IMG/VR virus record: IMGVR_UViG_3300023184_004198
Span: 148,615 to 212,614 of that record
Strand: one strand, 5' to 3'
Length of the DNA: 64,000 nucleotides
Shown here piece after piece: positions 3,187 to 53,602 of the stretch; within the stretch, counting starts at the first letter, position 1; each line of letters starts with the position of its first letter. The notes beneath the pieces are model-generated. The model had not been told where the DNA came from. It searched no databases and saw only the letters and a list, made by a program, of their open reading frames with translations. Position numbers and translations under genes: made by a program.

Positions 3187-3675
3187 ATGTCAATATCAGC
3201 AACACCAATTCCCACGCTAACATTAGATGAAGTTAATGAGTTGACCACTAGTATAACCAGTGGTATAGGAACCGACACTATCACCTACAGTCCAATCTGG
3301 AGCACAACAGGCACAGTGGTACCAGGTTATGGTGCTGCCATTGGTAATGGTGGAACTGGATACACCTACACAACCAATACAACCGGTCCTTGGATTGCCA
3401 CTGGTAGTAGCCCTGGTACTTTAAGTGTCGAACAAAGCGGTACCATTGATCTGCGAGGCGAAAACCCTGACATCAAGATCAACGGCAAAAGCATGGTGGC
3501 CTGGATGGAAAAGGTAGAGGAACGACTAAACATCCTCACACCTAATCCTGAGCTGGAAAAAGAATGGGACGATTTGCGCAGACTGGGTGAACGCTATAGA
3601 GCATTGGAAAAGAAGTGTAAGGAAAAAGCCCAGATGTGGGAAGCCTTGAAAAAAGTACAACCTAAACAACCATGA
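3187..3675 (+). CDS. Hypothetical protein (Thr/Gly-rich N-terminus, coiled-coil C-terminus)
   Basis: ORF 3055..3675; start chosen at MSISATP. Confidence 0.65.
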   Translation: MSISATPIPTLTLDEVNELTTSITSGIGTDTITYSPIWSTTGTVVPGYGAAIGNGGTGYTYTTNTTGPWIATGSSPGTLSVEQSGTIDLRGENPDIKINGKSMVAWMEKVEERLNILTPNPELEKEWDDLRRLGERYRALEKKCKEKAQMWEALKKVQPKQP

Positions 3676-4460
3676 TACCCAAGCAAATGACACCCAAACA
3701 ACGCATCAAACACATCTCCAAATGGATCCGAGACTATGCCCGCAAGGCCAAGGTAGATACTTTGGTAGTAGGCATTTCGGGCGGTATTGATTCATCAGTT
3801 GTCAGTGCCTTGTGTGCAGAAACTGGCCTAAAAACTGTTGTGGTACAAATGCCTATTCGGCAGAATCGCAAATTGGACAATCTAAGTTCAGCACAAGCAG
3901 GCTGGCTGTTGGAGCACTATCCCAACAACGTCACGCACATGAGCATGGATCTAACTCCAGTGTTCACTGCATTTGAGAAAAAAGTTTCTCCTTTTGGAGA
4001 CAGTGAATTAGCGTTTGCTAATAGCAGAGCCAGATTGCGCATGATGACCCTGTATCAAATTGCACAAAGTCATGGTGGTATTGTGGTGGGCACAGGCAAC
4101 CGAGTGGAAGACTTTGGCGTGGGATTCTTTACCAAGTATGGTGATGGCGGTGTGGATATTTCCCCCATTGGCGACTGCATGAAAACTGAAGTGTGGGACC
4201 TGGGCCGCGAACTGGGCCTGCTGAAAGAAATCATTGATGCACCACCCACAGACGGCTTGTGGGCTGATGGTCGCAACGACGAAGATCAGTTAGGCATGAC
4301 TTATCCTGAACTGGAAAAGGCCATGTTGCAAGACACTTACTCAGGCATTCGCGAGTATGCCACTGCGCCAGAAAAGAAGTTACTCAAACGTTATCGTGAG
4401 ATACGTGCAAGAAATCTGCACAAGATGACACCTATTCCTGTTTGCACAATACCTCATTAA
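3672..4460 (+). CDS. nadE: NH3-dependent NAD+ synthetase
   Basis: GISGGIDSS PP-loop, N.RARLRM, GTGN, GFFTKYGDG, PT.GLW...DEDQLG. Confidence 0.95.
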   Translation: MIPKQMTPKQRIKHISKWIRDYARKAKVDTLVVGISGGIDSSVVSALCAETGLKTVVVQMPIRQNRKLDNLSSAQAGWLLEHYPNNVTHMSMDLTPVFTAFEKKVSPFGDSELAFANSRARLRMMTLYQIAQSHGGIVVGTGNRVEDFGVGFFTKYGDGGVDISPIGDCMKTEVWDLGRELGLLKEIIDAPPTDGLWADGRNDEDQLGMTYPELEKAMLQDTYSGIREYATAPEKKLLKRYREIRARNLHKMTPIPVCTIPH

Positions 4461-4537: not shown

Positions 4538-4845
4538 GGTGGTAGAACAACACATTGCAATCAAATAGGATCTTCTACTGCTGATTGGTATCTTGTCCAA
4601 TTGAAAAAAACAAGTACCCGTAGCACTGGCAGAGGTTTGTCCAAGCCAACATCAGTGTTCGAAAGAGACTCTCGGAAAGTCTCTTCGTTGACAACTAGAA
4701 TTGGACAGGGTCATTTCTCAGGACGCGACCTTGTCCCAAACGAGTATGCCAAGGAGGCCCGAGGTCTATCTATGCTCATCTCAATCCCTAATCTGTCAAC
4801 GTGATTTACTCGGGTAACCGCGTACGGCCACGTATTGGCTTCTAA
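4538..4845 (+). ncRNA. Putative highly structured non-coding RNA / 5' leader of unknown family
   Basis: At least 7 complementary helices in a ~395-nt intergenic gap of an otherwise gene-dense genome (see findings). Confidence 0.55.
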
Positions 4846-4855
4846 AGGAAATCTA

Positions 4856-5431
4856 ATGAAATTGAATGTTAATCGACCCAATGCTCTAGCAACTTGGGCA
4901 GGTAGAATTATCAAAACTGTGGCTCTGTTTGCAGTGGCATTTACAGTATGGTCAGTGTGTCAATCACGCATGGAAGACCTAAGACAGAATCAAAACAATT
5001 GGGACCAGTCACATGTGAGTGCCGCAGAACGACTGCGCCAGTTGAACTGCTTGACCCAAAACATCTACTGGGAGGCAGCCTCAGAACCATTTGAGGGCAA
5101 AGTAGCAGTGGCGCAGGTCACGTTAAATAGAGTGGAATCAGGTAGATTTGCACCCACAGTATGCGGTGTGGTTTACCAGAAGAATGTGTTTTACGAAAAG
5201 GTAGTTTGCCAATTCAGCTGGTTGTGTGAGAGCACACACAAAACACGCCCAGTTTATCAGCCCATGTGGCAAGAGAGCGAACTAGTGGCCAAGAAAGTGT
5301 TGTTGGAAAACTTCCGATTGCCCAGCATGAAAAATGCGTTATACTATCACGCTGACTACGTAAACCCCAACTGGCGCAAGCCAAAAATTGACCAAATTGG
5401 TCGTCACATCTTTTATGGAGAACGTTCATGA
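4856..5431 (+). CDS. Cell wall hydrolase, SleB/Hydrolase_2 family, with N-terminal TM anchor
   Basis: CLTQNIYWEA..EP.EGKVAVAQVTLNRV, CQFSW, YYHADYVNPNW, IGRHIFY. Confidence 0.9.
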   Translation: MKLNVNRPNALATWAGRIIKTVALFAVAFTVWSVCQSRMEDLRQNQNNWDQSHVSAAERLRQLNCLTQNIYWEAASEPFEGKVAVAQVTLNRVESGRFAPTVCGVVYQKNVFYEKVVCQFSWLCESTHKTRPVYQPMWQESELVAKKVLLENFRLPSMKNALYYHADYVNPNWRKPKIDQIGRHIFYGERS

Positions 5432-7423: not shown

Positions 7424-8419
7424 ATGGCCGCAGAATTAACTATCAAATATGTTGTAGACTCTATTGAAGGCAATTCATTGAGTACCACTGTCACTGGACC
7501 GGAACATGGTTGGGTAGAATATTGCAATCAACGAGGACAACTTGTTTATGCTGATGCGGTCAGTGAAGAGTTTTATAAAAAATGCCACCAACAAGTCATT
7601 GAACTCATTACCAAACATGCCATAGAAGATAACAAAAAAAATCTTGGATTTATAAATCACATAAGCAACATACTAGTCAATGATGATTTTGTATTTCCCA
7701 TGTTCGGATCAGTGCCCAACGGCGGCAGTGAACTTGAAATTACCACGGGGGTTACAAGATTAATTGCCAGCATAATGAATGGTCGTACCGCTCGAGAATT
7801 AAAGACTGTGGCATTTACACCTAAAGGACAATCAGCAACGCAATTAGAAAATTTAAAACCTTTGACCAGTACTGCTAATTTTGAAAAAATATACAATCTT
7901 GCAGATATTGATTACGAAATCAGCATGTCGGACTCCCCAGCTGGCGATATGAGTGAGTTTCGATTTGATCGAAGTGTGCTGAAATATTCAATCTATGACA
8001 AAAAAGATCAGGCACTGCCACATACTCAAATAGGAGCAAACGTTTCAAATTTTTGGAGTAGACATATTAAAAAAGATAAAATTCAATTGAACATAAGATG
8101 TACTCCTGAAGTAGAAAAATTAATTCAACCCAGTAAAATTTTTAACTGGAATGTAGTGCATGAAAAACACGAAGAATGGCAATGGAGTTATGGAAGAATT
8201 TTGGGTGCATATCGAAAAACAGAAGTACCTTTGTCCTTTGATGAGTCTCAAATTCATCTCTGGTTGTACGATGTGTCTGAACCTGTGTACTTGGAATTGT
8301 TATTGCCTTGGGTCACTGGACAATATACTTGTTGCCATACCAAAAATAAAAAAGCATTGTTTTTTGACACTTCCAGTGATGTGACCAGTATGCAAATTGT
8401 TGGAGACTGGGTCAAATAA
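7424..8419 (+). CDS. Hypothetical protein (AT-rich)
   Basis: 331-aa ORF, AAGGA RBS. Confidence 0.75.
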
Positions 8420-8637
8420 TGGCCAAGGAAGAAACAATTAATATGGAAGGCAAGGTGCAAGAAATTCTACCCAATGCCATGTTTAGAGTATTGCTGGATG
8501 ATGTCAACACAGAAGTTATAGGATACTTGTCGGGAAAAATGCGCACTCATAATATCAAGGTGTTGCTGGGTGATAGGGTTGCCATGGAATTTAGTCCTTA
8601 CGATTTGACACGTGGGCGTATTACAAGAAGAAGATGA
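8419..8637 (+). CDS. infA: Translation initiation factor IF-1
   Basis: [19 protein letters not shown]...[23 protein letters not shown]. Confidence 0.95.
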
Positions 8638-9254
8638 TAACAGAGTACAGTGCAAAGAAACCCAATATACGAGGATTGATTTTATTAGATTGTTGGGAAC
8701 CGGAAGTTCGCGATCATTTTTATAAAGACAAGTATTATGTAAATCTCATTGAAAAACTCAAAGATAAAAATTTTGAGTACATAGTTCACAGCGCCCATGG
8801 ATTACAAATAGATTTAAATGATACTGTCATGTCCAACACCTTCAAAGTTTGCGACTACTCTGACAATCATTCAATCATGCGTAGTTTGTTGGAACACGCA
8901 GGGGATCTTAGAACATCAAATTTGTTGGAAAAATATCTTCTCAAGCAAAATGGAGCTTCAATTAACATCATAAACATCCACGACTTTGTTTGGTTCTCTA
9001 AGGATTATTTGTTAAACCGGATAAAAAACTGGTTGATTGTAGGACATACCTGGCAGATGTGTACGCATGACCATGCACTTGGGTTGCCTCGACTGGCCAA
9101 CTTATCAAAAACATATAATTTAAATTTTTATGCTACTGATTACAGTTTTTGCACTATGACCGAGCAAACAGCAGGATTAAAAGAGTTTGAACAAGACAGT
9201 CTGAATTGGTGTTTGATTGAAGATTTTGGATATCAATTACTGCCGCAGGACTAA
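8634..9254 (+). CDS. Hypothetical protein, weak isochorismatase-like fold
   Basis: GLILLDCW near N-terminus; LIVG..W..C.H. Confidence 0.55.
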
Positions 9255-9270
9255 CTAGATAAATATCTAC

Positions 9271-9819
9271 ATGGAACTGAGAGATCACATTAACCTAGTA
9301 GAGGCCAGTACTAGACCGGCCAAGTTGGAAACCACTCCCTTGCCTTATGGTCCCAAAGACTTGGCACCGGTGATGAGTGCTGACACAATTAATTATCATT
9401 TTGAACACTTGGCCAAGGGCTATGCAAAACGTTATAATGCTGGAGAAGGCAATGCAGATTTCAATCGTGCTGGCAGTTTTTTACACAATAAGTTTTTCCC
9501 TCAGCTTCGCGCTCCCAAAGGTGCCAACAGACCCCGTGGTGCTGTACTTGCCTTGATTGAAGAGCATTTCAAAACCTACGAAGACTTCAAAGAGGCTGTT
9601 AAAGAAAAGGCCATGAAGATACAGGGTTCAGGTTGGGTGTATTTGAGCACTGGTGGTGAAATCAAAACCATTGCCAACCATGCTGTGCGCACAGATATCT
9701 GTGTGCTCATTGACTGGTGGGAACACGCCTGGGCATTGGATTATCAAAGCGACAAAGAACGCTATCTAGATAACATCTGGAAAATAATAGATTGGGACGT
9801 CTGTAACGAACGTCTGTAA
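9271..9819 (+). CDS. sod: Fe/Mn superoxide dismutase with an extra N-terminal leader
   Basis: PLPY...LAP.MS..T..YH, FN..G..LH, QGSGW.YL, DWWEHA; all four metal-ligand positions present. Confidence 0.9.
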   Translation: MELRDHINLVEASTRPAKLETTPLPYGPKDLAPVMSADTINYHFEHLAKGYAKRYNAGEGNADFNRAGSFLHNKFFPQLRAPKGANRPRGAVLALIEEHFKTYEDFKEAVKEKAMKIQGSGWVYLSTGGEIKTIANHAVRTDICVLIDWWEHAWALDYQSDKERYLDNIWKIIDWDVCNERL

Positions 9820-9828
9820 GGAGTCGGC

Positions 9829-10092
9829 ATGTGGCAACTACTGTGGGTACTACTGCCCGTTGTGGCACATGCGGACATGAATGATTGTGTGAGAGAACCC
9901 AACCAGGATAAAAAGAATTATTGTATGGCTACTTACAGCGGGAGTGCCGCTTTTTGCGATCGAATACGAGGCTACGAATATCGAACACAATGCATGCGAA
10001 TGGTCATTGCCAAGCAACGAGAAGTCGCATATCAAACACCCAAACCACCCACAAAGGAAAAAAAGAATGAACCTGCAACCAGCGGCCATTAG
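9829..10092 (+). CDS. Small secreted Cys-containing protein
   Basis: Signal peptide ending AHA; four Cys; AAGGAG RBS. Confidence 0.7.
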
Positions 10093-10387
10093 CAAACTAA
10101 AAGAACTTGTTGCTGAAGAAGGCAACCCTGAACTAAAACTACGAGTATTTGTACAAGGTGGAGGATGTTCAGGATTCAGTTATGGTTTTACATTTGATGA
10201 AGCTCGAAACGAAGATGATTTTGATTTCTCTTACGACACTGTGCAAGTTGTTGTAGATGCCATGAGCATGCAGTATCTACAAGGATCAGAGATTGATTAC
10301 AAAGAAGATATGATGGGCGCCAGCTTTGTGATCAACAATCCGCAAGCAGTCAGCACTTGCGGATGTGGATCAAGTTTTAGCATTTAA
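10067..10387 (+). CDS. erpA: Iron-sulfur cluster insertion protein, ErpA/IscA (HesB) family
   Basis: [17 protein letters not shown]...[13 protein letters not shown]. Confidence 0.9.
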
Positions 10388-13161
10388 ACTGTTTCACCAT
10401 TTTCGCGGATGAACTCAGTGTCTCCGCCTACAATATCAAACACACGCATCCAGAAGCGTTCCACTGGTCGGAATATCCAACCCCAGCGGTTTTCGCCGTA
10501 ATAGTATTTGCCATAGCATACCAAGGGATCTGCAAAAGTCTTTGTGACCAAGAACTTGAACACACGTGACTCACGCATGAGTGGCACCAGTACTTCTGCC
10601 AGTCGGTAGTAGCCTCTGCGGTTTCGACCAGTCATCTTCTCATCACGGTATCTGCGTACCACTGAATCCATGGTGCCATCACCGTAGCGAGCTTCAAGCA
10701 TGATGAAGCAGCAACCACCACCACCACCGCCGCCGCCACCTGCACTGCAACCACTGCCGGCTGAACTGCTGCAACTGCCTGCACTGCCGTCGCCACCAAA
10801 TCCTGTTTGTCCCTTGTTATGAACCACAAGGTTGTTGGCTATGTAAGTGTTGTTGCCATCTAGTTTGAAATTATAGATTACTTGTTGTTGATCTTGATCG
10901 CTGTATTCTTCAATTGAGTCGATTACAACCCCCACGCCGTCTTCAGTTTCGACTACATCGCCCACGGCATATTTGCCCACGGTCATTTTATACTTGGCGT
11001 AGGTCATTACAGGGTCAAAAGATCGCCAACCATGGCCACGTATCCATACTGGGTGATCGCTGGTCATAAATGGTGTGCTGCCGTTGAATGCCATCATGGT
11101 GGCACCGGTTTCGCCCAAAGTGGGTCGCAAAAACTCCAGCACGGTGTTGTGTGCGCCATCCATACCCAGCACAACTTCCCCTAGCGCAACATCTTCGATA
11201 TTTTTGCGTGAACCGTCGGCCATGGTAATTTGTGTACCAGCCACAAAGCAACAACAAATACGAACAGTGTCATACACTTTTGGTGGGGGAGGAGGCAACG
11301 CTCTCAAATCCGGGGGTCTAGATACTCTGGCCCAATCATCTGATTGAGATATAAAATAGGGCACAAAAGTTCCAACCACCGGTTCCCATACCCCAGCTTC
11401 GTTTACATACATGCCGTCAATTTGTTTCCACTCGCCATCTACATTAACAAAAATAGTTTTAACTTCTTGCCAACCGCCGGCAGTTCTCACTCTAGGACCA
11501 AAACTGTTGAATATGAACACAGCGCCACCGTTGCCACCTTGCACCGAACCTGGCAGTCCACCTTGTCCTACTCCGGGCAACAGGTTATGATATGGACCAG
11601 TAAAAGCCACACCCGCACCATTGGGACTTAATGCTGTGCCAGTGGCAATTGGATTTAGATAACTTACTCCTACACCACCGGCTTGTCCGTAAGCATCACC
11701 TTCGCTACTGTAACCATTTTTTCCAGCGCCGCCAGGACCGCCAGGACCGCCTGCCCCTCCACCGCCACCATCTTTGTAGAAATCGCCTTGATTTTGGCCA
11801 ACTTGTCCATTGGAAATTCCAGCGGCAGTCTGTCCACGTGGTCCTGGTGCATTGGATTCAGAAATACCAGTATCACTGTTGCCAGCACCACCGCCACCAG
11901 CGCCACCTACTGCAACTGCTATCAATGTTTCATTTGGTGTTTGTGGATTTAGTACCAATGTGGTACAACCGCCAGACCCACCACCACCACCTGAACTGCC
12001 CACAGGACCTGCCAGTCCACCAGTGGCGCCTGACCAACTTTTACTAATGACAATGGCCACACCTGCACTTGGCAAAGCTGTTTGACTAAATGAAGCAAAG
12101 AATGAAATTGTGTGATAGCCTTGACTTACTGTAACATTTGTAGTGTATGCTGTGCTGTATGAATCAGAACCCGGTGTGGTATACACCACAACACCATCAA
12201 TGCTGAGTGTGGCTGTGTTGGCAGCAGCCATCTCAACTTGATAAGACCCAGTGTAAGGAAAATACACATTGGCATAGGTTCTAGCGCATGAACTGGCTTT
12301 GAAATTTTGTTCCCACATACCAAAGTCCAACATCAAATTGCTGTAAATATTGTCAGGCTCTGTGTCAGGATTTGGCACGTATAAAGGCGGACTGGCTACA
12401 GCACTTCTAGTATCAAATACATTTCTCACCAAACCATATCCACCCAACCCTGCATTGCCAGTTGTGGCTATGGTAAGTCCTACTCCAAATACGCCGTATG
12501 TGGCTCCAACATTGGCATTGGCAAGAATACGTATGGTATGATTACCCGGAGTTATAGTGCGTACAAATTGCACACCGCCTGACTCTTGTGTCTTCCAACT
12601 GTCAACACCGGATTCCAACAATACTTCGCCGTCAAGAAAAACTGTGGCTTGGTAATACGCTGCTAATCTAAAAACATAAGTGATAGAAAAAGGAAAAAAT
12701 ACAGTAAATGATTGATCAAAGTTTAAAGTATTGGCTAAACTGGTGGTACTGCCATCCAATGCTGTGCCAGTGTTCCACACACCAGTGTCATTCAAAAATT
12801 TTGACCAGCGAGCAACCGTGGTAGCACTGGCACGAGGCAGTGCTGTGGTTCTTCCAATAGGAACAGCGGTGCGTGTGTTAAAAATACTGTCTTCGTAAGA
12901 ATTGGCTATGCTACTGTTTCGGCCACTGCCACCAGCAGCGCCCACTGCAATCTCAATCACATCACCAGGATTAACAGTAAACGACGCTGATACATATCCA
13001 CCACCAGAGCCTGAGCCACCTTGACGACTCCCGTCGCTGCCGCCGGAACCTCCGCCTGCACCCCAGAGATAAGCCTGTACAGTTTGTGAATATCCGGCAG
13101 CAGGCAAAGTCAGGGTTTGCCGAGCGTTGATCATGCTCAAAGGTCTAATTAGTGTGGTCAT
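10384..13161 (-). CDS. Gly-rich tail fibre/adhesin with Hint domain and CFI-box-like C-terminus
   Basis: WGAGGG Gly-rich domain, PA14-like segments, CFVAGT...VHN Hint, CCFI...RRYRD...YY tail. Confidence 0.8.
10816..11250 (-). other. Hint (bacterial intein-like) autoprocessing domain, ~145 aa
   Basis: Block [14 protein letters not shown], block B TSDHP, blocks [21 protein letters not shown]; the +1 residue is K. Confidence 0.85.
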
Positions 13162-25906: not shown

Positions 25907-26193
25907 GATACTTACTTTTAACCTATTACAAAAAACCCGACGGCAAGATTGACGAAGTCATGGCCGTGGCCAAAAACTTGAAAAAACGCGACATTGCAAC
26001 TTGCAACGTCATACTTGACTTTAAAAAATTAGAAGTGATCAAAGCCAGTATGTCGGGCACAGATGTACCAAAAGATTTTGACCGCATTGCAGGGTATTAC
26101 CATCAACACTATGCTGCCACCATAGAGCGATTGTTCAACGAGAATGGCTACGAAGTTGAAGTCAACAAACCCCAACAAGATGCGGCTGGATGA
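25903..26193 (+). CDS. Hypothetical protein
   Basis: ATGA coupling, MRYLLLTYY. Confidence 0.7.
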   Translation: MRYLLLTYYKKPDGKIDEVMAVAKNLKKRDIATCNVILDFKKLEVIKASMSGTDVPKDFDRIAGYYHQHYAATIERLFNENGYEVEVNKPQQDAAG

Positions 26194-27118
26194 TTTAGAT
26201 GGTTTACACATTGAACTGACCAATCTGTGTACGTTGAAATGTCCAGGTTGCCTGAGAACACAGTTGATTAAAAAATGGCCTCGCCATTGGAAAAATTACA
26301 GTTTAGATTTGGATGTTGTTGCAAAATTCTTAGACGTTGATTTGCAGGGCAAAACCATTACCTTGTGTGGCAACACAGGCGATTCTATATATCATCCCAA
26401 GTTTCATGACTTTGTGGCATATTTTAAAAATCGCGGTGCCCAGCTTCGAGTGTTTACCAATGGTAGTTATCGCAATCAGTCTTGGTGGGACACCACTGTT
26501 TCTTATTTGGACAGCGCAGATACAGTGATTTTTAGCGTGGATGGTCTGCCAGAAAATTTTACACAATATCGAATCAATGCAGATTGGCAATCAATTTTGA
26601 TTGGCATGCAGGCTTGTATACAAGCATCTTGCAAAACTGTGTGGAAATACATTCCGTTCAATTTCAATGAAAATGACATTGCTGCCGCAGAACAACTCAG
26701 TCAAAACATGGGCTTTGATGTTTTTAAAATTGAACAAAGCAGCAGATTTGACGAACGCAATGGAGTAGATTATCAGTTGATGTCTTTCATGCCCAGCGGC
26801 AATCAACACATAGATGCAAGATATCAACATCAAGCAGAATGGAAAAACTCAAGGCTCACAATCCAGATTGATCCTGTTTGCAATGATCAAAGAAGTCATT
26901 ACATTTCGGCCAACGGGTTTTACAGTCCCTGTTGTTTTGTATCTGACTATGCATTTTATTACAAGACAGAATTTGGTAAAAACAAAAAAATGTACAACAT
27001 TGCAGACCGTACACTCACCGGGTTGTTTCAACAAACAGAATTCAATGAGTTTTACAATAATTTACACGATCACGCAGTTTGTCAATTTAGTTGTCCCGCT
27101 ACACAGGAAAGAAAATGA
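26180..27118 (+). CDS. Radical SAM protein with Twitch/SPASM-like C-terminus
   Basis: CTLKCPGC, TNG, SVDG, C...G..SPCC...C...C. Confidence 0.88.
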   Translation: MRLDDLDGLHIELTNLCTLKCPGCLRTQLIKKWPRHWKNYSLDLDVVAKFLDVDLQGKTITLCGNTGDSIYHPKFHDFVAYFKNRGAQLRVFTNGSYRNQSWWDTTVSYLDSADTVIFSVDGLPENFTQYRINADWQSILIGMQACIQASCKTVWKYIPFNFNENDIAAAEQLSQNMGFDVFKIEQSSRFDERNGVDYQLMSFMPSGNQHIDARYQHQAEWKNSRLTIQIDPVCNDQRSHYISANGFYSPCCFVSDYAFYYKTEFGKNKKMYNIADRTLTGLFQQTEFNEFYNNLHDHAVCQFSCPATQERK

Positions 27119-31052: not shown

Positions 31053-31450
31053 AACGCATACTGATCATGGGTTTGAGTGGTACAGGCAAGACCACACTGG
31101 CTAAGTCACTGCAAACCAAATTGAACTCTGTACATTTTAATGCAGATCAAGTTAGAGGTATGTTCAATGACTGGGACTTCAGTGCAGAAGGACGCATACG
31201 TCAAAGTCAACGCATGCGAGATCTTGCTGATGCAGCCCAGGCTGACTATGTGATTGCTGATTTTATTGCACCATTGAATCGCATGCGAGTAATATTTGAC
31301 GCTGATTTTACCATATGGATGGACACTGTACAGCGCAGTCGGTTTGCAGACACTGACCAAATGTTTGTACCTCCTACTAGTTGGGAATATGACATGAGGA
31401 TCACCTCATTTGACTACAATATAGATAATATCTTAAAGGAACTACCATGA
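31049..31450 (+). CDS. Adenylylsulfate (APS) kinase-like P-loop kinase
   Basis: GLSGTGKTT, NAD.VR, DFS.EGR..Q, IADFIAP...R. Confidence 0.75.
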   Translation: MKRILIMGLSGTGKTTLAKSLQTKLNSVHFNADQVRGMFNDWDFSAEGRIRQSQRMRDLADAAQADYVIADFIAPLNRMRVIFDADFTIWMDTVQRSRFADTDQMFVPPTSWEYDMRITSFDYNIDNILKELP

Positions 31451-32412
31451 AACGATTACTCTTACTGTTATTAATGATTCCCATGATGGCCCTGGCCTGG
31501 GAACCCAGCCGCCCAGTTACTGTGGTGATAGGCAATGCACCTGGTGCAGGCAATGAACTAGCATTTAGAAAACTGTCACAGATCATCAATCGCACCAACA
31601 AAAAAATTACGTTTGTTGTTGAAAACCGTGCAGGCGCAGACAGCGTGATTGCAATGAATCACATGATGCAAGTATTGCCAGATGGGCATACCATTGCTGC
31701 TTTTAATCACATGAGCCAATATGTTACCCAGGACATTTGGCAGCGCGACATCAAAAAGTATGACTACAACACATTTGAGGATGTGCTTACCATAGGCAAA
31801 AGTCCCTTAGTGCTTGTTGCTATTTCCACCAGCGCAGTCAACACTCCAGATGAATTTGCTACACTGTTGCGTACCACACAACAACCCGTGTTTGTGGCTG
31901 TGGGGTCAGGCGCACATAGAATCACATTTGAGTATTTGATGCTGAAGACCGGGGGCAATAAAAACTTGGTTCGGCACATTGCTTTTAATGGGCCGGCACA
32001 GGCATTGCAAAGTGTTGCTAGTAGTGCAGGTGGCACAGAGTTTGGTATCATGCCCTTGACTGTGGCCCGTCCCTTGATCGAAGCAGGCCGGGTCAAAGCC
32101 ATTGGCATCACTGGTGATCGAAAAATAGCGCAAATGCCAAATATCCCACTATTACGAAAGATCGCCCCGGGCATCAACATATTTGCTGCCTGGAACATTG
32201 TGTTGCCGCCACGCACTGATCGTGTGATTGTGGACTATTATGCGGATTTATTTGCTCGGGCTATAAATACTACAGAATACCAAGAATGGATGGATCAAAA
32301 CTTGGTATTTGTGGAAAGCCGAGAGTTAGATCCAGATGGTTTACGGCAACATGCCCAAGAACTACGCCGAACATTCCTACCCCTAGCAAACCAAATCAAC
32401 CCCACCGAATAA
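31447..32412 (+). CDS. Bug/TctC tripartite tricarboxylate transporter substrate-binding protein
   Basis: Signal peptide, P.RPV.V.....PG.G, VVENRAGA, PDG.T, AGRVKAI.ITG..R....P.IP. Confidence 0.85.
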   Translation: MKRLLLLLLMIPMMALAWEPSRPVTVVIGNAPGAGNELAFRKLSQIINRTNKKITFVVENRAGADSVIAMNHMMQVLPDGHTIAAFNHMSQYVTQDIWQRDIKKYDYNTFEDVLTIGKSPLVLVAISTSAVNTPDEFATLLRTTQQPVFVAVGSGAHRITFEYLMLKTGGNKNLVRHIAFNGPAQALQSVASSAGGTEFGIMPLTVARPLIEAGRVKAIGITGDRKIAQMPNIPLLRKIAPGINIFAAWNIVLPPRTDRVIVDYYADLFARAINTTEYQEWMDQNLVFVESRELDPDGLRQHAQELRRTFLPLANQINPTE

Positions 32413-40851: not shown

Positions 40852-43107
40852 ATGCAAAATAATCCCGAAATTGAACATATTGTTGAACAAGCAGTGAAAA
40901 TTGCGCGAGACAAACATCATGAATATGTGATCACCGAACACTTGTTGTTGAGCCTGATCAGGCATACACCTTTTCGTAAAACACTGGATCGTTTTGGTGT
41001 AGAAATTACACAAATGGATCAAGAAATTGAGGCCTATCTTGATGGATTGAAACACTTGGTCAAGACTGATGCAGATTTGCAACCACGCAAAACACAGACA
41101 CTAGAACGACTGTTCAATCGTGCCAATGTGCAGGTTATGTTCACTGGTCGTAGAACACTAACAACTTTGGACCTGTACTTGAGCATCATGGCCGAAACCA
41201 ACAGCCATGCACACTACTTCTTGCTGAAATATGGTGTGAAGAAAACTGAATTTGCTGATTTCTACAGCAAAAATTACACAGCCGCCGAAACAGCCCGGAT
41301 GAATACCAATCAGGCCAACGACATTTTGAACGAGTACTGCACCAATTTAACAGCACAGGCACAAGCAGATCAGTTGGAACCACTTATTGGTCGCCAAACC
41401 GAACTGCACGAAATGATCACAGTAATGGCACGACGTTTCAAAGCCAACGTGCTCATGGTGGGTGATCCTGGTGTGGGCAAGACCTGCATTGTGGACGGCC
41501 TTGCACAGGAAATTGTTGCTGGCCGTGTGCCCAAATTCATTCAGGACCACGAAGTATGGGGTTTGGAAATTGGTAGTCTGTTGGCAGGATCAAAGTATCG
41601 TGGTGAATTTGAAGAAAAATTCAAGGCTGTGATTGCTGCCTTGGAAACCAAGAAAAAATGTATCCTGTTTATTGACGAAGCACACACTATGAAAGGTGCT
41701 GGTTCAGGTTCACAAAGCAGTCTAGACTTTGCCAACATGTTGAAACCTGCAATCACCAAAGGCCACTTGAAAGTAATTGCTAGTACAACCTGGGAAGAAT
41801 ACTACGAATCATTTGAAAAGGATCGCGCACTCATGCGTAGATTCTACAGACTCAGCATTGACGAACCCGATCAGGACACCACAGAAAAGATTTTGATTGG
41901 GTTAAGCCCCAGATTGGAAAAATTTCATGACGTCATGATTGACACAGATGCTATCATGGCCTCTGTTGAACTGGCCAATCGATACATTCATGATCGTAAG
42001 AATCCTGACAAAGCCATTGATTTGTTGGATGCGTCATGTGCTAGAGAGCGTGTAAAGGATGCGGGCACAGTCACAGTCACCAAAGAAATGATTCAAGCAC
42101 AAGTAAGCCGTGTGGCAGGTGTACCTGTGGATCGCTTACAGAATGAACGCAGTGCAAAGATTGTGGATCTCGAAAGCAATATCAAGCAGAAGTTGTATGG
42201 ACAAGACTCAGCAGTGGATTCAGTGCTGGAACGTGTGTACATCAACTTTGCTGGTATTGGCAATGCCCGGCGTCCTATTAGCAGTTTCCTGTTCCTAGGC
42301 CCCACAGGTACAGGCAAAACTGAGTTAGCCAAACTGCTCGGCGAACACTTGGAAATGAAACTGTTGCGTTATGACATGAGTGAGTATCAGGAAAAACACA
42401 CAGTGTCAAGCCTGATTGGTGCGCCTCCTGGCTATGTGGGCTTTGAAGATGGCAACGTGGGCGGCGGCAAGTTAATTTCAGACATCAGCAAGAATCCCTA
42501 TGCTATTATCTTGTTTGACGAGATTGAAAAAGCACACAGTGATGTCACCAACATCTTGTTGCAGATGCTGGACGAGGGGCACATTACTAGTGCAAATGGC
42601 AAAAGAGTTGATGTGAAAAACTGTATCATTATTATGACATCAAACTTGGGTGCTCAAGCCAATGACACCAACAACATTGGTTTTGGATCATTGGAGAAGT
42701 CAGGAGAAGAAGACCGTGCAATGAAAGACTTCTTCCGTCCTGAACTGCGCAATCGCATTGACAAGATTTGCAAGTTCAACAAACTGAACACCTTGGCCAT
42801 CAAGAAGATTGTGGTCAAGTTCGTGGACGAACTCAAAGCCAGTATGACACACAAAAACATCAGACTGGTGCTGACTGAACCGGTGATTGACTACTTGGCT
42901 GACAAAGGCTACGACTCCAAGATGGGCGCACGTCCACTGAGTCGTAAGATTGATGAACTGATTCGTGTGCCACTGAGTAAGAAGATCCTGTTTGATCGAC
43001 TGGAAAATTGCACCATCACTGCTGTGATGACTGAAGATACAGTAGAGTTCAACATTGAGCAAGATGCTGTGACCATTGTGAACTCTGAGGGGATTATTAT
43101 TGTATAA
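40852..43107 (+). CDS. clpA: ATP-dependent Clp protease ATP-binding subunit, ClpA-like
   Basis: N-domain EHLLL; GDPGVGKT and GPTGTGKT Walker A; GAPPGYVG; IGF loop; no ClpB middle domain. Confidence 0.9.
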   Translation: MQNNPEIEHIVEQAVKIARDKHHEYVITEHLLLSLIRHTPFRKTLDRFGVEITQMDQEIEAYLDGLKHLVKTDADLQPRKTQTLERLFNRANVQVMFTGRRTLTTLDLYLSIMAETNSHAHYFLLKYGVKKTEFADFYSKNYTAAETARMNTNQANDILNEYCTNLTAQAQADQLEPLIGRQTELHEMITVMARRFKANVLMVGDPGVGKTCIVDGLAQEIVAGRVPKFIQDHEVWGLEIGSLLAGSKYRGEFEEKFKAVIAALETKKKCILFIDEAHTMKGAGSGSQSSLDFANMLKPAITKGHLKVIASTTWEEYYESFEKDRALMRRFYRLSIDEPDQDTTEKILIGLSPRLEKFHDVMIDTDAIMASVELANRYIHDRKNPDKAIDLLDASCARERVKDAGTVTVTKEMIQAQVSRVAGVPVDRLQNERSAKIVDLESNIKQKLYGQDSAVDSVLERVYINFAGIGNARRPISSFLFLGPTGTGKTELAKLLGEHLEMKLLRYDMSEYQEKHTVSSLIGAPPGYVGFEDGNVGGGKLISDISKNPYAIILFDEIEKAHSDVTNILLQMLDEGHITSANGKRVDVKNCIIIMTSNLGAQANDTNNIGFGSLEKSGEEDRAMKDFFRPELRNRIDKICKFNKLNTLAIKKIVVKFVDELKASMTHKNIRLVLTEPVIDYLADKGYDSKMGARPLSRKIDELIRVPLSKKILFDRLENCTITAVMTEDTVEFNIEQDAVTIVNSEGIIIV

Positions 43108-44784: not shown

Positions 44785-44799
44785 CGCTAAATACAGTTT

Positions 44800-46128
44800 A
44801 TGACAACTGTAGTAATCATGCCCGGTGGGTTTCACCCTTTTCATGCAGGACATTTGGCCCTGTATCAATCAGCGCAACGAGCCTTCCCTGGCGCCGACGT
44901 GTATGTTGCTGCCACTGATGATACCAGCACACGCCCGTTTCCCTTTCAAGTCAAAGAAAAACTAGCACAGTTGGCCGGGGTTGACCGTGGCAGATTCATG
45001 CGTGTCAAAAGCCCATTCCAGGCTGCAGAAATCACAGCACCATACAATCCCCAAAAAGATCAGTTGATATTTGTTCGCAGTGAAAAAGACGCAGACAAAC
45101 CACCACGAGCCGGTGGAGTTAAAAAGAACAGCGAGCCATCATACTTGCAACCATTGCTGGGTGCAAAAAAACTAGAACCATTTGCAAAACATGCTTACAT
45201 GGCCTACTTGCCCACAGTGGAGTTTGGTCCAGGTATGACTTCGGCCACAGAGATACGTGCTGCTTGGCCTAAATTGGATGAGCGTAGAAAAACTGCATTG
45301 GTAATGAGCTTGTATCCAAAAACACAGGCCAATCCTAAATTGGCCGCTAATGTGGTCAAAATGTTAGACAACGCTATTGGCACAGAAGTTGCTGAAAATC
45401 AAGGCTGGGCAGCCACTTACGAGTCGGACGGCATCACTGCTGGTACCGGCGTGACTGGTGGCATGCACGCCACATATCAAGATAGATACAACCAACCTGT
45501 GGACGAAGCCAAGTTGCATTTTACTGATCCCACAATCCGAGTCAACTTGTACTATGTTCCGCCAAAACTACAGCATCAAGGCAAAGTGCAGAATGTAGCT
45601 CACAATATTCCTTACTCAACTGTGCAACCATTGATTGATAGACTGATGCAAAAATATCCCAACATGCATCCTGAATATCTAGTTGTGGGACCAACAGACA
45701 AAAATCAGTATGGTCAACGACTAAAAGAACAAGAGCAGTTGTCTGGAACAATTAAAGCAATACCCAAAGACGACTCAGAATATGATTGGGACTATTACTA
45801 CAAAGATCAACAGATTCAACCGGGCACAGACATACATTCAAAGATAAAAGATTTGCACATGAGTCAAAAATATCCTGAGTATAATGCTCTGAAATCAGCA
45901 TTTGAAAAACCTTATACCTCAGGCAAAGTAATACCGCCTGAACAGTGGCCAGAAAATCAACCATCGCAGGATCGTGTTGTGCCAAACTTTTCGGATGTTG
46001 GAGGCCCTGATTATACCATTCCCAAGCAGTTTATTAAAGATCCAGAAGGTAAACCCATCAGGCTCAAAGACTTTTTACCGCATGATCCAGACATGAACGA
46101 AGACTACATTGAAGAATGTCGGTCGTAA
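44800..46128 (+). CDS. HIGH-motif nucleotidyl/cytidyltransferase-like protein with accessory C-terminal modules
   Basis: PGGFHPFHAGH; SATEIR; C-terminal modules separated by xxE linkers. Confidence 0.75.
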   Translation: MTTVVIMPGGFHPFHAGHLALYQSAQRAFPGADVYVAATDDTSTRPFPFQVKEKLAQLAGVDRGRFMRVKSPFQAAEITAPYNPQKDQLIFVRSEKDADKPPRAGGVKKNSEPSYLQPLLGAKKLEPFAKHAYMAYLPTVEFGPGMTSATEIRAAWPKLDERRKTALVMSLYPKTQANPKLAANVVKMLDNAIGTEVAENQGWAATYESDGITAGTGVTGGMHATYQDRYNQPVDEAKLHFTDPTIRVNLYYVPPKLQHQGKVQNVAHNIPYSTVQPLIDRLMQKYPNMHPEYLVVGPTDKNQYGQRLKEQEQLSGTIKAIPKDDSEYDWDYYYKDQQIQPGTDIHSKIKDLHMSQKYPEYNALKSAFEKPYTSGKVIPPEQWPENQPSQDRVVPNFSDVGGPDYTIPKQFIKDPEGKPIRLKDFLPHDPDMNEDYIEECRS

Positions 46129-47125: not shown

Positions 47126-47142
47126 CGGTAAATATAGTTCGT

Positions 47143-52059: not shown

Positions 52060-52592
52060 AGATGTTAAAAAAATTTCCGCAGTTGGCTACATCTGCTATG
52101 TTGTTTGCTCCCTCGTTGGATGAGCATTACAAAATATTTGCTACGTTTTTCAATGACAAAGATACAGTATTGGATGTAGGGTATGGTGATGGCAGTTTTG
52201 CTAGATACATAGGTGCAGTTGGAGTAGACGAAAATACTGATCTCAGCACAATCAATTTGCAACAATTCGATACATTATTATTTTCTGAATCAATAGGGTA
52301 TTTGAGTTATTATGAATTTTTAACATACTTCAATCAAGTTCAACCTAAAAAAATAGTGATCAAAGATTTTTTGTGTACCCAACCCGTTGCTGTTCCATAT
52401 TTTAATTACAACTTTGAATTTTTTCATTCAACAATTTTGCCTTTTTTATTGAAACAAGGATATCACGCAAATGTTTCGATGTTTGATCCACACGTTGGCC
52501 GTTGGATCTCGTTGTTAGAACAATGCGGACTAGAATTTGTACCTGCACTGGACATTAAAAATATAATTGCAGTGTTTGAAAGATCATTATGA
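52056..52592 (+). CDS. SAM-dependent methyltransferase (AT-rich)
   Basis: VLDVGYGDG; FSESIGY; IKDF. Confidence 0.7.
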   Translation: MKMLKKFPQLATSAMLFAPSLDEHYKIFATFFNDKDTVLDVGYGDGSFARYIGAVGVDENTDLSTINLQQFDTLLFSESIGYLSYYEFLTYFNQVQPKKIVIKDFLCTQPVAVPYFNYNFEFFHSTILPFLLKQGYHANVSMFDPHVGRWISLLEQCGLEFVPALDIKNIIAVFERSL

Positions 52593-53017
52593 GAAACTAC
52601 ATCAACCTAATCGAAGCAGTACAACGGGGTTGTCCCTTGGCCACACATGACATTGATGAGAACTTGAAGAATCGTCAAACAGCCATAGATGAATATCACT
52701 ATGGTCCTGCCAATCCTGCCCGTGCTGAAGACTACTGGAAAAAGAGTGCCAAGATTTTTGGTGTCAGTGAGGCCACTGCAAAGACCATGCAATGTGGCAA
52801 CTGTGCGGCATTTGATGTCAGTGACAGCATGAGAGAATGTATTGCTGCGGGCATACGTGGTGATGCCACCGGAGTTGATGCCAACGCCAGCATCAACTTG
52901 GCTGACCTGGGCTACTGTAACTTTTTACACTTCAAGTGTGCAGGCACACGTAGTTGCAAGGCCTGGATCACTGGTGGGCCCATCACCGAAAAAGACAAAA
53001 ATAAAAGCGCGGACTGA
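52589..53017 (+). CDS. Cys-rich (HiPIP-like spacing) protein with leader
   Basis: MRNYINLIE leader; CGNC.AF...GYC.....C...RSC.AW. Confidence 0.65.
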   Translation: MRNYINLIEAVQRGCPLATHDIDENLKNRQTAIDEYHYGPANPARAEDYWKKSAKIFGVSEATAKTMQCGNCAAFDVSDSMRECIAAGIRGDATGVDANASINLADLGYCNFLHFKCAGTRSCKAWITGGPITEKDKNKSAD

Positions 53018-53020
53018 ACT

Positions 53021-53596
53021 GTGCAACAACATGAATTCACTGCTGAAGCCAGCCCGGACACATTGTCAGGTAGTTTTACTCCAGATCTTGTGAGCAGCAA
53101 GACTTGGTTGTGTAATCAACTCAAAAAACAACTGGGCGATACCAGTGCTGGCGACATCTATATCTTGGGCTCATGGTACGGCAACCTGGGCATATTTTTA
53201 CAGCAGGCCAACATTGACTTTGATCGCTTGATCATGGTAGAAACTCGTCCACGCTTGTTGGCCACAGCACGCCGACTGCTAGAACCACTATATCAAGCGG
53301 GGCAACTAAAGTTGGTGCTGGGTCGTGCTGAACAAATTGAGTATCCACGCAAAAACTTCACAGTGATCAACACCAGCGCCAACGACATGAGTCGTAGTTG
53401 GATAACTAGAGTACCCCTGGGCACTCTTACTGTGATACAATCACGTGACAATGTCAAAGACGTCAAGGTCATTACAGACACAGCAGCACAGTTTTATGCC
53501 AAGTTTCCCCTGGAAAACACTGTGTATTGGGGGCAACGCAGACTGCGTGATCCAGAAACACGCTACACACGCTTCATGAAGATTGGCTATAAATAA
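53021..53596 (+). CDS. Rossmann/methyltransferase-like protein with leader
   Basis: SK.WL, ILGSWYG, INTS, RFM.IG; GTG start. Confidence 0.65.
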   Translation: MQQHEFTAEASPDTLSGSFTPDLVSSKTWLCNQLKKQLGDTSAGDIYILGSWYGNLGIFLQQANIDFDRLIMVETRPRLLATARRLLEPLYQAGQLKLVLGRAEQIEYPRKNFTVINTSANDMSRSWITRVPLGTLTVIQSRDNVKDVKVITDTAAQFYAKFPLENTVYWGQRRLRDPETRYTRFMKIGYK

Positions 53597-53602
53597 ACAA
53601 TC

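What the first reader, a model, noticed from the sequence alone, without database searches (positions are those of the whole stretch)
9271..9819. Superoxide dismutase apparently addressed to the capsid
This compact Fe/Mn-SOD keeps its metal ligands but has extra N-terminal residues (MELRDHINLVE|ASTRPAK) ahead of the usual xLPxLPY start, and sits behind a late-type TAAATA motif. A virion-packaged SOD could protect DNA in sunlit water or blunt ROS at entry. ErpA, Dps and a ferritin-like gene complete an iron/oxidative-stress set.
Basis: partly seen in the sequence, partly recalled or inferred. Interest (0 to 1): 0.65.

Follow-up and report, generated by a model that had tools for sequence, protein, structure and literature searches.

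The report
Phage superoxide dismutase with capsid-address leader
A giant freshwater bacteriophage encodes an intact iron/manganese superoxide dismutase with a short N-terminal tag of the kind phage T4 uses to load proteins into its head, so the antioxidant enzyme is probably packed with the DNA and carried into the next host cell.

Summary
Window 9271-9819 (+) encodes a 182-aa Fe/Mn superoxide dismutase (SOD). All four metal ligands are present (H43, H72, D148, H152), the AF2 model is confident (pLDDT 95.8), and the hairpin is shortened. About 17 residues precede the point where cellular SODs begin.

The window is part of a 212-kb fragment of a roughly 345-kb freshwater jumbo phage with T4-type head genes.

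The extension has two parts: a fast-evolving 8-15-aa leader that always ends [L/I]-[V/I/L]-Glu|Ala, then a near-invariant linker. The main evidence:
- The same leader (consensus hydrophobic-R-x-x-I-[N/D]-[L/I]-[V/I/L]-E|A) opens two unrelated proteins of the same genome. A similar one (FEQLIE) opens the acidic head-core protein next to the prohead protease in relatives.
- All [L/I]-x-E motifs of the major capsid protein lie in its propeptide.
- 25 of 39 diverged "compact" SOD clusters carry such a leader. None of 30 canonical SODs does.
- TAAATA is a real late-promoter-like element. It sits 4-5 nt before the ATG in 64 of 74 related loci, which implies a leaderless late mRNA.

Packaging and cleavage are inferred for this phage, not shown, and the biological role is open. 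I rate it a new variant of a known kind, interest about 0.6.

The parts
9260..9265 (+). TAAATA late-promoter-like element, 5 nt upstream of the SOD start codon; implies a leaderless late mRNA
   Evidence: Sequence. About 14-fold enrichment upstream of genes. Bimodal spacing to the ATG, 4-8 nt or 15-26 nt. TAAATA-N4-5-ATG is kept in 64 of 74 related SOD loci. The same element precedes the head operon of relative G001. A gp55-like late sigma is found in relatives.
9271..9819 (+). Gene for a 182-aa Fe/Mn superoxide dismutase pro-enzyme (the end coordinate includes the stop codon)
   Evidence: AF2 model pLDDT 95.8. Foldseek TM 0.80-0.85 to solved Fe/Mn SODs.
9271..9303 (+). Leader, residues 1-11 (MELRDHINLVE). 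Proposed capsid-targeting propeptide, with the proposed cut after Glu11 (L-V-E|A)
   Evidence: Variable in length and sequence but always ends [LIV][LIV]E followed by A or Q in 120 close homologues. Position-specific consensus. Degenerate codons at conserved positions. Predicted helix 3-13.
9304..9339 (+). Linker, residues 12-23 (ASTRPAKLETTP). Near-invariant among close relatives, and the predicted new N-terminus after cleavage
   Evidence: Extended (non-helical) in the model.
9340..9816 (+). SOD catalytic body, residues 24-182. Ligand codons: H43 at 9397-9399, H72 at 9484-9486, D148 at 9712-9714, H152 at 9724-9726. The alpha-hairpin is shortened.
52589..53017 (+). Second gene with the same leader: a 142-aa protein of unknown family starting MRNYINLIE|A
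   Evidence: The leader is conserved in 80 IMG/VR relatives. No Pfam or PHROG family. It lies two genes downstream of the 1638-aa Amidoligase_2+GNAT protein at 47143-52059.

Best explanation
The gene encodes a pro-form of a compact Fe/Mn superoxide dismutase carrying a natural T4-type capsid-targeting sequence.

Proposed course of events:
1. Late in infection the gene is transcribed from a TAAATA late promoter. The transcript starts at or next to the AUG, so the mRNA is leaderless (inferred).
2. The 11-residue amphipathic N-terminal helix docks the protein onto the scaffolding core while the prohead assembles (inferred by analogy with T4 IPI-III and Alt).
3. The gp21-type prohead protease then cuts after Glu11, in the L-V-E|A motif (inferred).
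4. A 171-residue SOD starting ASTRPAK is left inside the head with the DNA.
5. From there it is most likely ejected with the genome into the next host. That would supply superoxide-scavenging activity before any phage gene is expressed. A role inside the free particle is the alternative.

Shown here: the SOD identity, the intact active site, the leader and its selection pattern, its sharing among unrelated proteins, the T4-type head and late-transcription genes in the lineage, and the promoter element.

Shown by others for a homologue only: presence in purified virions.
For: (1) SOD identity and intact ligands.

(2) Selection on the leader. In 120 homologues of 83-93% identity the first 8-15 residues vary in length and sequence. 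Yet P9 hydrophobic, P8 Arg, P5 Ile, P4 Asp/Asn, P3 Leu/Ile, P2 Val/Ile/Leu, P1 Glu (89 of 89 distinct leaders) and P1' Ala (85 of 89) are kept. They are kept through synonymous codons.

(3) Sharing among unrelated proteins. A PSSM built from the leaders of the SOD and the 142-aa protein scores three N-termini of the 212-kb record at 23.6-31.6: those two, on which it was trained, and independently a 395-aa protein at G000:131007-132194. The best of about 60,000 internal windows scores 11.5. The 142-aa protein keeps its leader across 80 relatives.

(4) Link to head assembly. The acidic head-core protein just upstream of the prohead protease in five near-complete relatives starts M-x-x-FEQLIE.

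(5) T4-type head genes. A gp23-type MCP sits at the start of the record. PF03420 protease is present in five of five near-complete relatives, in PA5oct and in Vibrio phage 2.275.O. The record begins at the last codons of the scaffold gene, so the protease gene lies just off the fragment.

(6) Protease motif. All four [L/I]-x-E motifs of the MCP lie in its first 42 residues and none in the other 356. The scaffold has 4.1 per 100 aa against a proteome mean of 0.93.

(7) Clade-wide pattern. 25 of 39 compact SOD cluster representatives, down to about 31% identity, carry a 16-29-aa extension with hydrophobic-x-E ending at residue 7-17. None of 30 canonical SODs has such a leader. The cellular SODs found in GTDB genomes lack it too.

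(8) Virion detection of a homologue. The ESI-MS/MS was done on CsCl-purified particles (PMC7318152).

(9) T4 precedent. T4 uses 10-19-aa propeptides. The first 10 residues of IPIII suffice to load foreign proteins. Processing depends on P3 and P1 (PMC9026906; PMC10229621).

(10) Late promoter..
Against: - There is no proteome, N-terminal sequence or activity measurement for this phage.
- The protease gene itself is not on the 212-kb fragment.
- The PA5oct virion list also includes proteins the authors call 'virion-unrelated enzymes' (GTP cyclohydrolase, QueD, FtsH and ligase are flagged too). Detection there may therefore reflect carry-over. The peptide table was not available to me.
- In PA5oct I found no other protein with a clearly similar leader.
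- Vibrio phage 2.275.O has the protease but its SOD truly lacks a leader. Some compact SODs carry a C-terminal extension instead. Packaging is therefore not obligatory for phage SODs.
- The SOD body holds a second L-I-E at residues 95-97, inside a predicted helix.
- Ejection of a folded metallo-enzyme dimer through a tail tube would need unfolding and re-metallation.
- Complex prediction for the protease with SOD residues 1-40 gave no verdict.
Confidence: 0.6

Rival explanations
1. The SOD works only in the cytoplasm of the infected cell, as an auxiliary antioxidant made late. The N-terminal helix is a lineage-specific appendage (stability, oligomerisation, partner binding) with no role in packaging. 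PA5oct's mass-spectrometry signal would then be carry-over of an abundant late protein.
For: Phage-encoded SODs without any leader exist, for example Vibrio phage 2.275.O and several compact clusters. PA5oct's virion list includes obviously cytoplasmic enzymes. Other stress and iron genes (ErpA-like, Dps, ClpB-like) in the window show no leader.
Against: An SOD-specific structural role does not explain why the same 9-11-aa leader heads two unrelated proteins, or why it resembles the start of the head-core protein. It also does not explain an invariant Glu-Ala junction after a fast-evolving, length-variable stretch, which is the pattern of a removable propeptide.
Confidence: 0.25
2. The leader is a sorting or regulatory tag for another destination or process. 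Candidates are another virion part, an assembly chaperone, a membrane-proximal assembly site, or controlled proteolysis by the phage's Clp-type machinery. It would not be a head-core address.
For: These phages encode Clp components. A ClpB/ClpA-like ATPase lies in the window (40852-43107). ClpX and ClpS lie beside the SOD gene in PA5oct. The actual receptor of the leader is unknown, and complex prediction gave nothing.
Against: The [L/I]-x-E|A ending matches the T4 gp21 cleavage logic. The motif is confined to the propeptide of the MCP and enriched in the scaffold. The head-core protein starts in the same way. The leader has no features of a Sec/Tat signal or membrane anchor: it is charged, amphipathic and only 9-15 aa long.
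Confidence: 0.1
3. There is no real extension: translation starts downstream and the first 17 codons are untranslated.
For: A TTG codon (Leu19) lies just before the SOD body. No Shine-Dalgarno sequence precedes ATG 9271.
Against: There is no in-frame ATG between codon 1 and Met35, which is already inside the domain. The leader shows amino-acid-level conservation with synonymous codon turnover. The promoter-to-ATG spacing of 4-5 nt is kept in 64 of 74 relatives whatever lies upstream. 23 genes of the record share this SD-less architecture.
Confidence: 0.03

Closest known systems
T4 internal proteins IPI, IPII, IPIII and Alt with their capsid-targeting sequences (CTS)
   Same: A short N-terminal propeptide (10-19 aa in T4, 9-15 aa here) ending hydrophobic-x-Glu. 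It is shared by otherwise unrelated proteins of one phage, in a phage with gp21/gp22/gp23-type head assembly and late expression (PMC9026906, PMC5694885, PMC3012670).
   Different: The cargo is a metallo-enzyme of central oxidative-stress metabolism, not a small basic DNA-associated or anti-restriction protein or an ADP-ribosyltransferase. The leader sequence has its own consensus (R at P8, I at P5, N/D at P4). Targeting and cleavage are not shown experimentally here.
Pseudomonas phage PA5oct EST35_0261 (QCG76142.1), annotated 'hypothetical protein, ESI-MS/MS'
   Same: Same length (182 aa), 37% identity over residues 3-176, the same compact SOD body with all ligands, and a leader ending I-A-E|A. 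The phage has a PF03420 protease.
   Different: Host and habitat differ (Pseudomonas rather than freshwater metagenomes). In PA5oct the motif sits about 24 nt upstream of the ATG, not abutting it. No other PA5oct protein shows a clearly similar leader. The published work does not name the protein as a SOD (no occurrence of 'superoxide' in PMC7318152).
Engineered T4 CTS fusions (GFP, staphylococcal nuclease, beta-galactosidase, LacI)
   Same: An enzyme of ordinary size is loaded into a T4-type head by a 10-aa N-terminal tag that is then cleaved off. The cargo is delivered to the infected cell and can refold there (PMC9026906 sections 2.6-2.7; PMC10229621).
   Different: Those fusions are laboratory constructs. 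This would be a natural, widespread and evolutionarily old counterpart.
Canonical cellular Fe/Mn superoxide dismutases (e.g. E. coli FeSOD 1isa, P. gingivalis SOD 1qnn, archaeal SODs 3ak1 and 1wb8)
   Same: Same fold (TM 0.80-0.85), the same four ligands, and the conserved Tyr34 equivalent (Y51), the WEH motif and the GSGW strand.
   Different: Identity is only 25-30%. About 16-19 residues are missing from the helix-1/helix-2 hairpin. A 17-aa N-terminal extension is present. The residue aligned with the MnSOD second-shell Gln is His137, as in some archaeal-type SODs. That last point is my reading of the alignments and was not tested further.
Virion-packaged Cu,Zn-SODs of eukaryotic giant viruses (chlorovirus PBCV-1, Megavirus) and encapsulin cargo-loading peptides.
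   Same: The general idea is shared: an antioxidant enzyme carried in a virus particle, or a short peptide that loads oxidative-stress enzymes into an HK97-fold shell.
   Different: The enzyme family (Cu,Zn versus Fe/Mn), the hosts and the loading signals all differ. Encapsulin signals are usually C-terminal and are not cleaved.

Membership tests
Fe/Mn superoxide dismutase (Pfam PF02777 + PF00081) | C-terminal alpha/beta domain matches the family model above its curated cut-off | tested here: met
   PF02777 E=1e-21, 77.3 bits against a cut-off of 20.9.
Fe/Mn superoxide dismutase (Pfam PF02777 + PF00081) | N-terminal alpha-hairpin domain matches the family model above its curated cut-off | tested here: inconclusive
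   PF00081 scores 24.9 bits, under the cut-off of 27. Only profile positions 5-49 of 82 match, because the hairpin is shortened. Close homologues pass, and the fold comparison covers the region.
Fe/Mn superoxide dismutase (Pfam PF02777 + PF00081) | Four metal ligands His, His, Asp, His in register | tested here: met
   H43, H72, D148 and H152 are invariant or >=90% conserved in 60 sequences. The 'HHDH' pattern holds in the representative alignment.
Fe/Mn superoxide dismutase (Pfam PF02777 + PF00081) | Two-domain SOD fold | tested here: met
   AF2 pLDDT 95.8. Foldseek probability 1.00 and TM 0.80-0.85 to many solved SODs.
Fe/Mn superoxide dismutase (Pfam PF02777 + PF00081) | Catalytic dismutation of superoxide; metal identity | not testable with these tools
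   Needs an activity gel and metal analysis of recombinant or virion protein.
T4-type capsid-targeted (CTS-bearing) internal head proteins | Short N-terminal propeptide ending in the prohead-protease motif [L/I]-x-Glu | tested here: met
   L-V-E at residues 9-11. The Glu is invariant and the next residue is Ala in 85 of 89 distinct leaders.
T4-type capsid-targeted (CTS-bearing) internal head proteins | The phage encodes a gp21-type prohead protease, a scaffold core and a gp23-type capsid protein | tested here: met
   The MCP is on the record. The protease is absent from the 61%-complete fragment but present in five of five near-complete relatives, beside the scaffold and MCP. The fragment starts at the scaffold's last codons.
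T4-type capsid-targeted (CTS-bearing) internal head proteins | The same leader is shared by unrelated proteins of one phage | tested here: met
   The SOD, the 142-aa protein and the 395-aa protein score 23.6-31.6 on the leader PSSM, against an internal maximum of 11.5. The head-core protein starts similarly.
T4-type capsid-targeted (CTS-bearing) internal head proteins | Late expression together with head genes | tested here: inconclusive
   The TAAATA element is enriched upstream of genes and stands before the head operon and the SOD. A gp55-like sigma is found in relatives. No transcript timing data exist, and the RNA contigs were uninformative.
T4-type capsid-targeted (CTS-bearing) internal head proteins | Physical presence in the head and removal of the propeptide | not testable with these tools
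   The only evidence is the PA5oct homologue's 'ESI-MS/MS' note on CsCl-purified virions.

The most novel reading that the evidence does not exclude
An abundant, globally distributed group of freshwater jumbo phages uses a portable 9-11-residue N-terminal address (hydrophobic-R-x-x-I-N/D-L-V/I-E|A) as a general cargo-loading code for its T4-type head. With it the phages pack a working antioxidant metallo-enzyme and at least two further proteins of unknown function, one with a weak nuclease-like lead, and deliver them with the DNA. This would be a natural protein-delivery system whose SOD cargo is ancient and widespread: leaders persist in compact-SOD clusters down to about 31% identity. The same phages also express much of their late programme, including this gene, from leaderless mRNAs that start at an AUG placed 4-8 nt behind the late promoter.
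Probability: 0.45. Interest if true: 0.72.

Novelty: new variant of a known kind. Interest (0 to 1): 0.6.

Why it matters
If confirmed, this would be the first natural case known to me of a Fe/Mn SOD carried as capsid cargo by a bacteriophage. I found no paper describing one, and the PA5oct protein was published as hypothetical.

It would show that T4's capsid-targeting trick is used in nature to ship housekeeping-type enzymes as well as anti-restriction proteins. It would also show that oxidative stress at the moment of genome entry, or during the particle's time in sunlit water, is a selective pressure on large phages.

The leader consensus defined here gives a simple sequence rule for predicting head cargo in uncultured T4-type jumbo phages. 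It also offers a second, independently evolved tag for engineered protein packaging.

The phage group is common: more than 3,000 SOD homologues turned up in metagenomes, and this stretch is held by runs from 10 freshwater, lake, pond or marine studies. PA5oct offers a culturable model in which the prediction can be tested directly.

Tried and rejected
- Complex prediction of the relative's prohead protease (L168:1447-2076) with SOD residues 1-40 scored 0.00. This is no verdict either way and is not evidence.
- The supplementary peptide table of the PA5oct paper is not held, so I could not check whether peptides cover the leader. The earlier preprint and the MIJ3 paper do not mention the protein.
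- PA5oct proteome scan with the leader PSSM: only the SOD stands out (14.8 against an internal maximum of 12.9). This gives no independent support from that phage.
- Megablast of the region against GenBank phages found no match.
- PHROGs gave no family for the SOD, the 142-aa protein or its neighbours. Pfam gave none for the 142-aa and 395-aa proteins.
- The protein-atlas look-up gave only unnamed viral clusters. For the 395-aa protein it gave a sub-threshold lead (0.87) to restriction endonuclease R-HinP1I, which I did not pursue.
- An apparent WYL_2-SOD fusion in a Haliscomenobacter MAG contig (L189) is a run of N in the assembly, not a fusion.
- The metatranscriptome contigs cover only about 50 nt of the SOD gene and 175 nt near the ErpA start. 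They cannot show strand, 5' ends or expression.
- A looser search for internal or alternative-start leaders found nothing convincing beyond the three proteins.
- Metal specificity (Fe, Mn or cambialistic) cannot be decided from sequence, so I make no claim.
I repeated the step using file references only.

Full report
**1. What is at the coordinates**

Window 9271-9819 (+) is an open frame of 182 codons starting MELRDHINLVEASTRPAKLETTPLPY. It is a Fe/Mn superoxide dismutase (SOD).
- Pfam Sod_Fe_C scores 1e-21, and Sod_Fe_N scores 2.8e-5, just under its cut-off.
- 155 distinct PDB SOD sequences match at E<=1e-3.
- The AlphaFold2 model built on a 60-sequence alignment has mean pLDDT 95.8. It superposes on solved Fe/Mn SODs with TM 0.80-0.85.
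- The four metal ligands are present (H43, H72, D148, H152) and conserved. So are the Tyr34 equivalent (Y51), GSGW and the D-x-W-E-H motif.
- The enzyme is 'compact': the two N-terminal ligand histidines are 29 residues apart, against 36-55 in canonical SODs.
- Solved cellular SODs align from their residues 3-5 to query residues 20-21.

**2. The genome**

The window is G000:C1:148615-212614 of a 212,614-bp IMG/VR virus record, estimated 61% complete.
- The record starts with the last codons of a scaffold gene, followed by a T4 gp23-type major capsid protein (PF07068, 2e-97).
- Near-complete relatives of 331-364 kb share the SOD at 79-91% identity. They show the full head module in T4 order: acidic core protein, PF03420 prohead protease, scaffold, MCP.
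- The protease gene of G000 therefore lies just beyond the end of the fragment, which explains the negative result.
- Relatives also encode a gp55-like late sigma factor.
- The stretch occurs in lake, freshwater, pond and one marine metagenome from 10 studies.
- The SOD family is very abundant in metagenomes, with 3,359 homologues at E<=1e-5.

**3. Anatomy of the extension**

I compared 120 homologues of 83-93% identity and 80 IMG/VR loci. The first 8-15 residues differ in length and sequence; examples are MREHIDLIE, MELRDHINLVE, MHTCIRQDIDLIE and METASAIMDFLHIVE. They always end [L/I/V]-[V/I/L]-Glu and are followed by a near-invariant ASTRPAKLETTPLPY.

Aligned on the Glu, 89 distinct leaders give this consensus:

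| Position | Residues |
|---|---|
| P9 | I/L/M |
| P8 | R (72 of 89) |
| P5 | I/L |
| P4 | D/N |
| P3 | L/I |
| P2 | V/I/L |
| P1 | E (89 of 89) |
| P1' | A (85 of 89) |

The conserved positions are written with many synonymous codons: four Arg, three Ile, six Leu, two Glu and three Ala codons. The constraint therefore acts on the peptide, not on the RNA.

The model predicts a helix for residues 3-13 and an extended linker up to the SOD body. A fast-evolving, length-variable stretch ending in an invariant junction is what a removable propeptide looks like.

**4. The leader is a shared module**

I built a position-specific matrix from the leaders of the SOD and the 142-aa protein and scanned every N-terminus and every internal window of the record. 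Three proteins score 23.6-31.6, and the best of about 60,000 internal windows scores 11.5. The three are:
- the SOD;
- a 142-aa protein at window 52589-53017 (MRNYINLIE|A);
- a 395-aa protein at G000:131007-132194 (MRDLINLIE|N), which was not used to build the matrix.

The 142-aa protein keeps its leader in 80 relatives down to 69% identity. Neither protein has a Pfam family.

In five near-complete relatives the acidic head-core protein immediately upstream of the protease starts M-x-x-FEQLIE|Y. That ties this kind of N-terminus to the head-assembly module.

The [L/I]-x-E motif also behaves like the lineage's protease site. In the MCP all four copies lie within residues 1-42 and none in the remaining 356. 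The chance of that arrangement, given four motifs, is about 1e-4. The scaffold has 4.1 motifs per 100 aa against a proteome mean of 0.93.

**5. Distribution**

I used the exhaustive search of 50%-identity cluster representatives and an alignment of the full-length hits.
- 39 clusters are 'compact' SODs with all four ligands. Of these, 25 carry an N-terminal extension of 16-29 residues with a hydrophobic-x-Glu ending at residue 7-17. Examples are MTEDVRKLINLIE|AAG, MQNIREIITLVE|AAS and MTTNIDFRQYIHILE|AHN.
- The 30 canonical SODs have either 5-12 residues before the domain, or signal peptides or long unrelated N-termini.
- The scan of one genome per prokaryotic species found this SOD only on two phage-like contigs binned into a Haliscomenobacter MAG. 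All other cellular hits are at most 33% identical and have no leader.
- The leader is not universal among phages. Vibrio phage 2.275.O has the protease but a leaderless SOD, with stop codons upstream in frame. A subgroup has C-terminal extensions instead.

**6. Experimental evidence from a homologue**

The closest cultured homologues are in the Pseudomonas jumbo phage PA5oct group: 37% identity over residues 3-176, the same 182-aa length, and the leader MNDSIKKYISIAE|AASS. PA5oct has a PF03420 protease.

[quoted passage not shown] The word 'superoxide' does not occur in that paper.

The same list contains seven 'virion-unrelated enzymes', and neighbours such as QueD and FtsH are flagged too. 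The detection alone therefore does not prove specific packaging.

**7. Promoter**

TAAATA at 9260-9265 is a genuine element. Of 109 copies in the record, 50 lie in the 60 nt upstream of gene starts in the sense orientation, against 3.6 expected.

The distance from the motif to the ATG is bimodal:
- 4-8 nt in 21 genes, plus two genes at 1 nt, with no room for a ribosome-binding site;
- 15-26 nt, with AGGA or GGAG in between.

The SOD belongs to the first class. In 64 of 74 related loci TAAATA ends 4-5 nt before the leader's ATG. This holds although the upstream neighbour differs (often the IF-1 gene directly) and the leader length varies.

The head operon of relative G001 is preceded by the same element. 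From my knowledge of T4 late promoters, transcription starts about six bases after TATAAATA. This spacing would put the 5' end at or next to the AUG, giving a leaderless late mRNA. That step is inference.

**8. Mechanism proposed**

A pro-SOD is made late. It is docked to the scaffolding core by its amphipathic leader and trimmed after Glu11 by the prohead protease. It is retained in the head as a 171-residue enzyme and most likely ejected with the DNA.

T4 provides the precedent for each step. Its propeptides are 10-19 aa long. The first ten residues of IPIII suffice to load GFP, nucleases or LacI. Processing depends on P3 and P1. Ejected cargo can refold in the host (PMC9026906, PMC10229621, PMC5694885).

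What the SOD does once packed is open. It could protect the incoming genome and phage Fe-S enzymes against superoxide at entry, or it could act in the free particle.

The neighbouring iron and stress genes (ErpA-like at 10067-10387, Dps at 63215-63661) are real. They are dispersed and carry no leader.

**9. Rivals**

- A purely cytoplasmic SOD with an unrelated N-terminal helix fits the leaderless phage SODs and the noisy PA5oct list. It does not explain the sharing of the leader or the invariant Glu-Ala junction.
- A tag for another destination or for Clp-dependent proteolysis cannot be excluded, but it fits the motif statistics less well.
- A wrong start codon is very unlikely.

**10. Verdict**

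It is a new variant of a known kind: T4-type capsid targeting with a Fe/Mn SOD as natural cargo. My confidence in the packaging model is about 0.6, and in the SOD identity above 0.95. Interest is about 0.6.

No genetic code other than table 11 was used.

Noticed in passing
G000 record as a whole; in the window e.g. 9260-9271, 47129-47145, 44788-44802, 53590-53605: 23 genes have TAAATA ending only 1-8 nt before the ATG, with no room for a Shine-Dalgarno sequence. Another 22 have it 14-32 nt upstream (most at 15-26 nt), with AGGA or GGAG in between. This suggests that about half of the late transcription units give leaderless mRNAs. The phage also encodes IF-1 (window 8419-8637). A second enriched upstream motif is TGCTATAAT, which resembles a sigma-70 -10 element.
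   Followed up: partly
window 52589-53017 (+) and G000:C1:131007-132194 (-) = L187:3008-4195: Two proteins of unknown family (142 aa and 395 aa) start with the same nonapeptide leader as the SOD (MRNYINLIE|A, MRDLINLIE|N). The 395-aa protein sits next to a 369-aa protein that by eye carries LysM-like and lytic-transglycosylase-like motifs (not scanned against a family library), and it has a weak sub-threshold lead to restriction endonuclease R-HinP1I. In relative G001 its 535-aa counterpart has Asp in place of the Glu (MRDLLDLLD|S). In T4 that change blocks cleavage but not targeting.
   Followed up: partly
window 47143-52059 (+): A 1638-aa protein with Amidoligase_2 and GNAT acetyltransferase domains, under a TAAATA 8 nt before its ATG and two genes upstream of the 142-aa leader protein. 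It resembles the 'polyvalent' multi-enzyme proteins that large phages are thought to deliver with their DNA (my own knowledge).
   Followed up: no
window 10384-13161 (-): A 925-aa glycine-rich protein with a Hint (intein/hedgehog-type) domain around residues 637-736 and long Gly runs. It is on the opposite strand to almost all neighbours and directly abuts the ErpA-like gene.
   Followed up: no
window 8634-9254 (+): The 206-aa ORF between IF-1 and the SOD is strain-specific. In most relatives the SOD promoter follows the IF-1 stop codon directly (upstream sequence encodes ...RITRR). DNA contigs of related strains cover the SOD and ErpA genes far more densely than this ORF.
   Followed up: partly
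L188 and L189 (contigs NZ_JBBAKG010000049 and ...036 of a Haliscomenobacter sp. MAG): Two contigs binned into a freshwater Bacteroidota MAG carry this phage group's SOD at 81-88% identity, with the leader on L188. This could be a host hint or a binning artefact. L189 has a run of N between the WYL_2 gene and the SOD that mimics a fusion.
   Followed up: partly
P0121, P0124, P0125, P0128 (cluster representatives, 247-368 aa): A subgroup of compact SODs (53-59% identical to this one) starts directly at the SOD body. Instead of a leader it carries an 80-200-aa C-terminal extension. One has a basic tail with a sub-threshold DUF5872 match.
   Followed up: partly
window 40852-43107, 3672-4460, 31447-32412, 26144-27118, 4835-5431: Auxiliary genes typical of jumbo phages: a ClpB/ClpA-type double-AAA chaperone, an NAD synthase, a TctC-family solute-binding protein, a radical-SAM/SPASM enzyme and a SleB-type cell-wall hydrolase.
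   Followed up: no
L186:867-2063 (MCP of relative G001) and G000:C1:57-1253: The major capsid protein has four [L/I]-x-E motifs, all within its first 42 residues (positions 7, 19, 34, 42), and none in the mature part. The likely maturation cut is after YLKE(41-42), which gives a much shorter propeptide than the roughly 65 residues I recall for T4.
   Followed up: partly
window 9829-10092 (+): An 87-aa ORF between the SOD and the ErpA-like gene starts with a signal-peptide-like stretch ([15 protein letters not shown]) and is Cys-rich. A near-identical 175-nt RNA-library contig covers its 3' end and the ErpA start.
   Followed up: no
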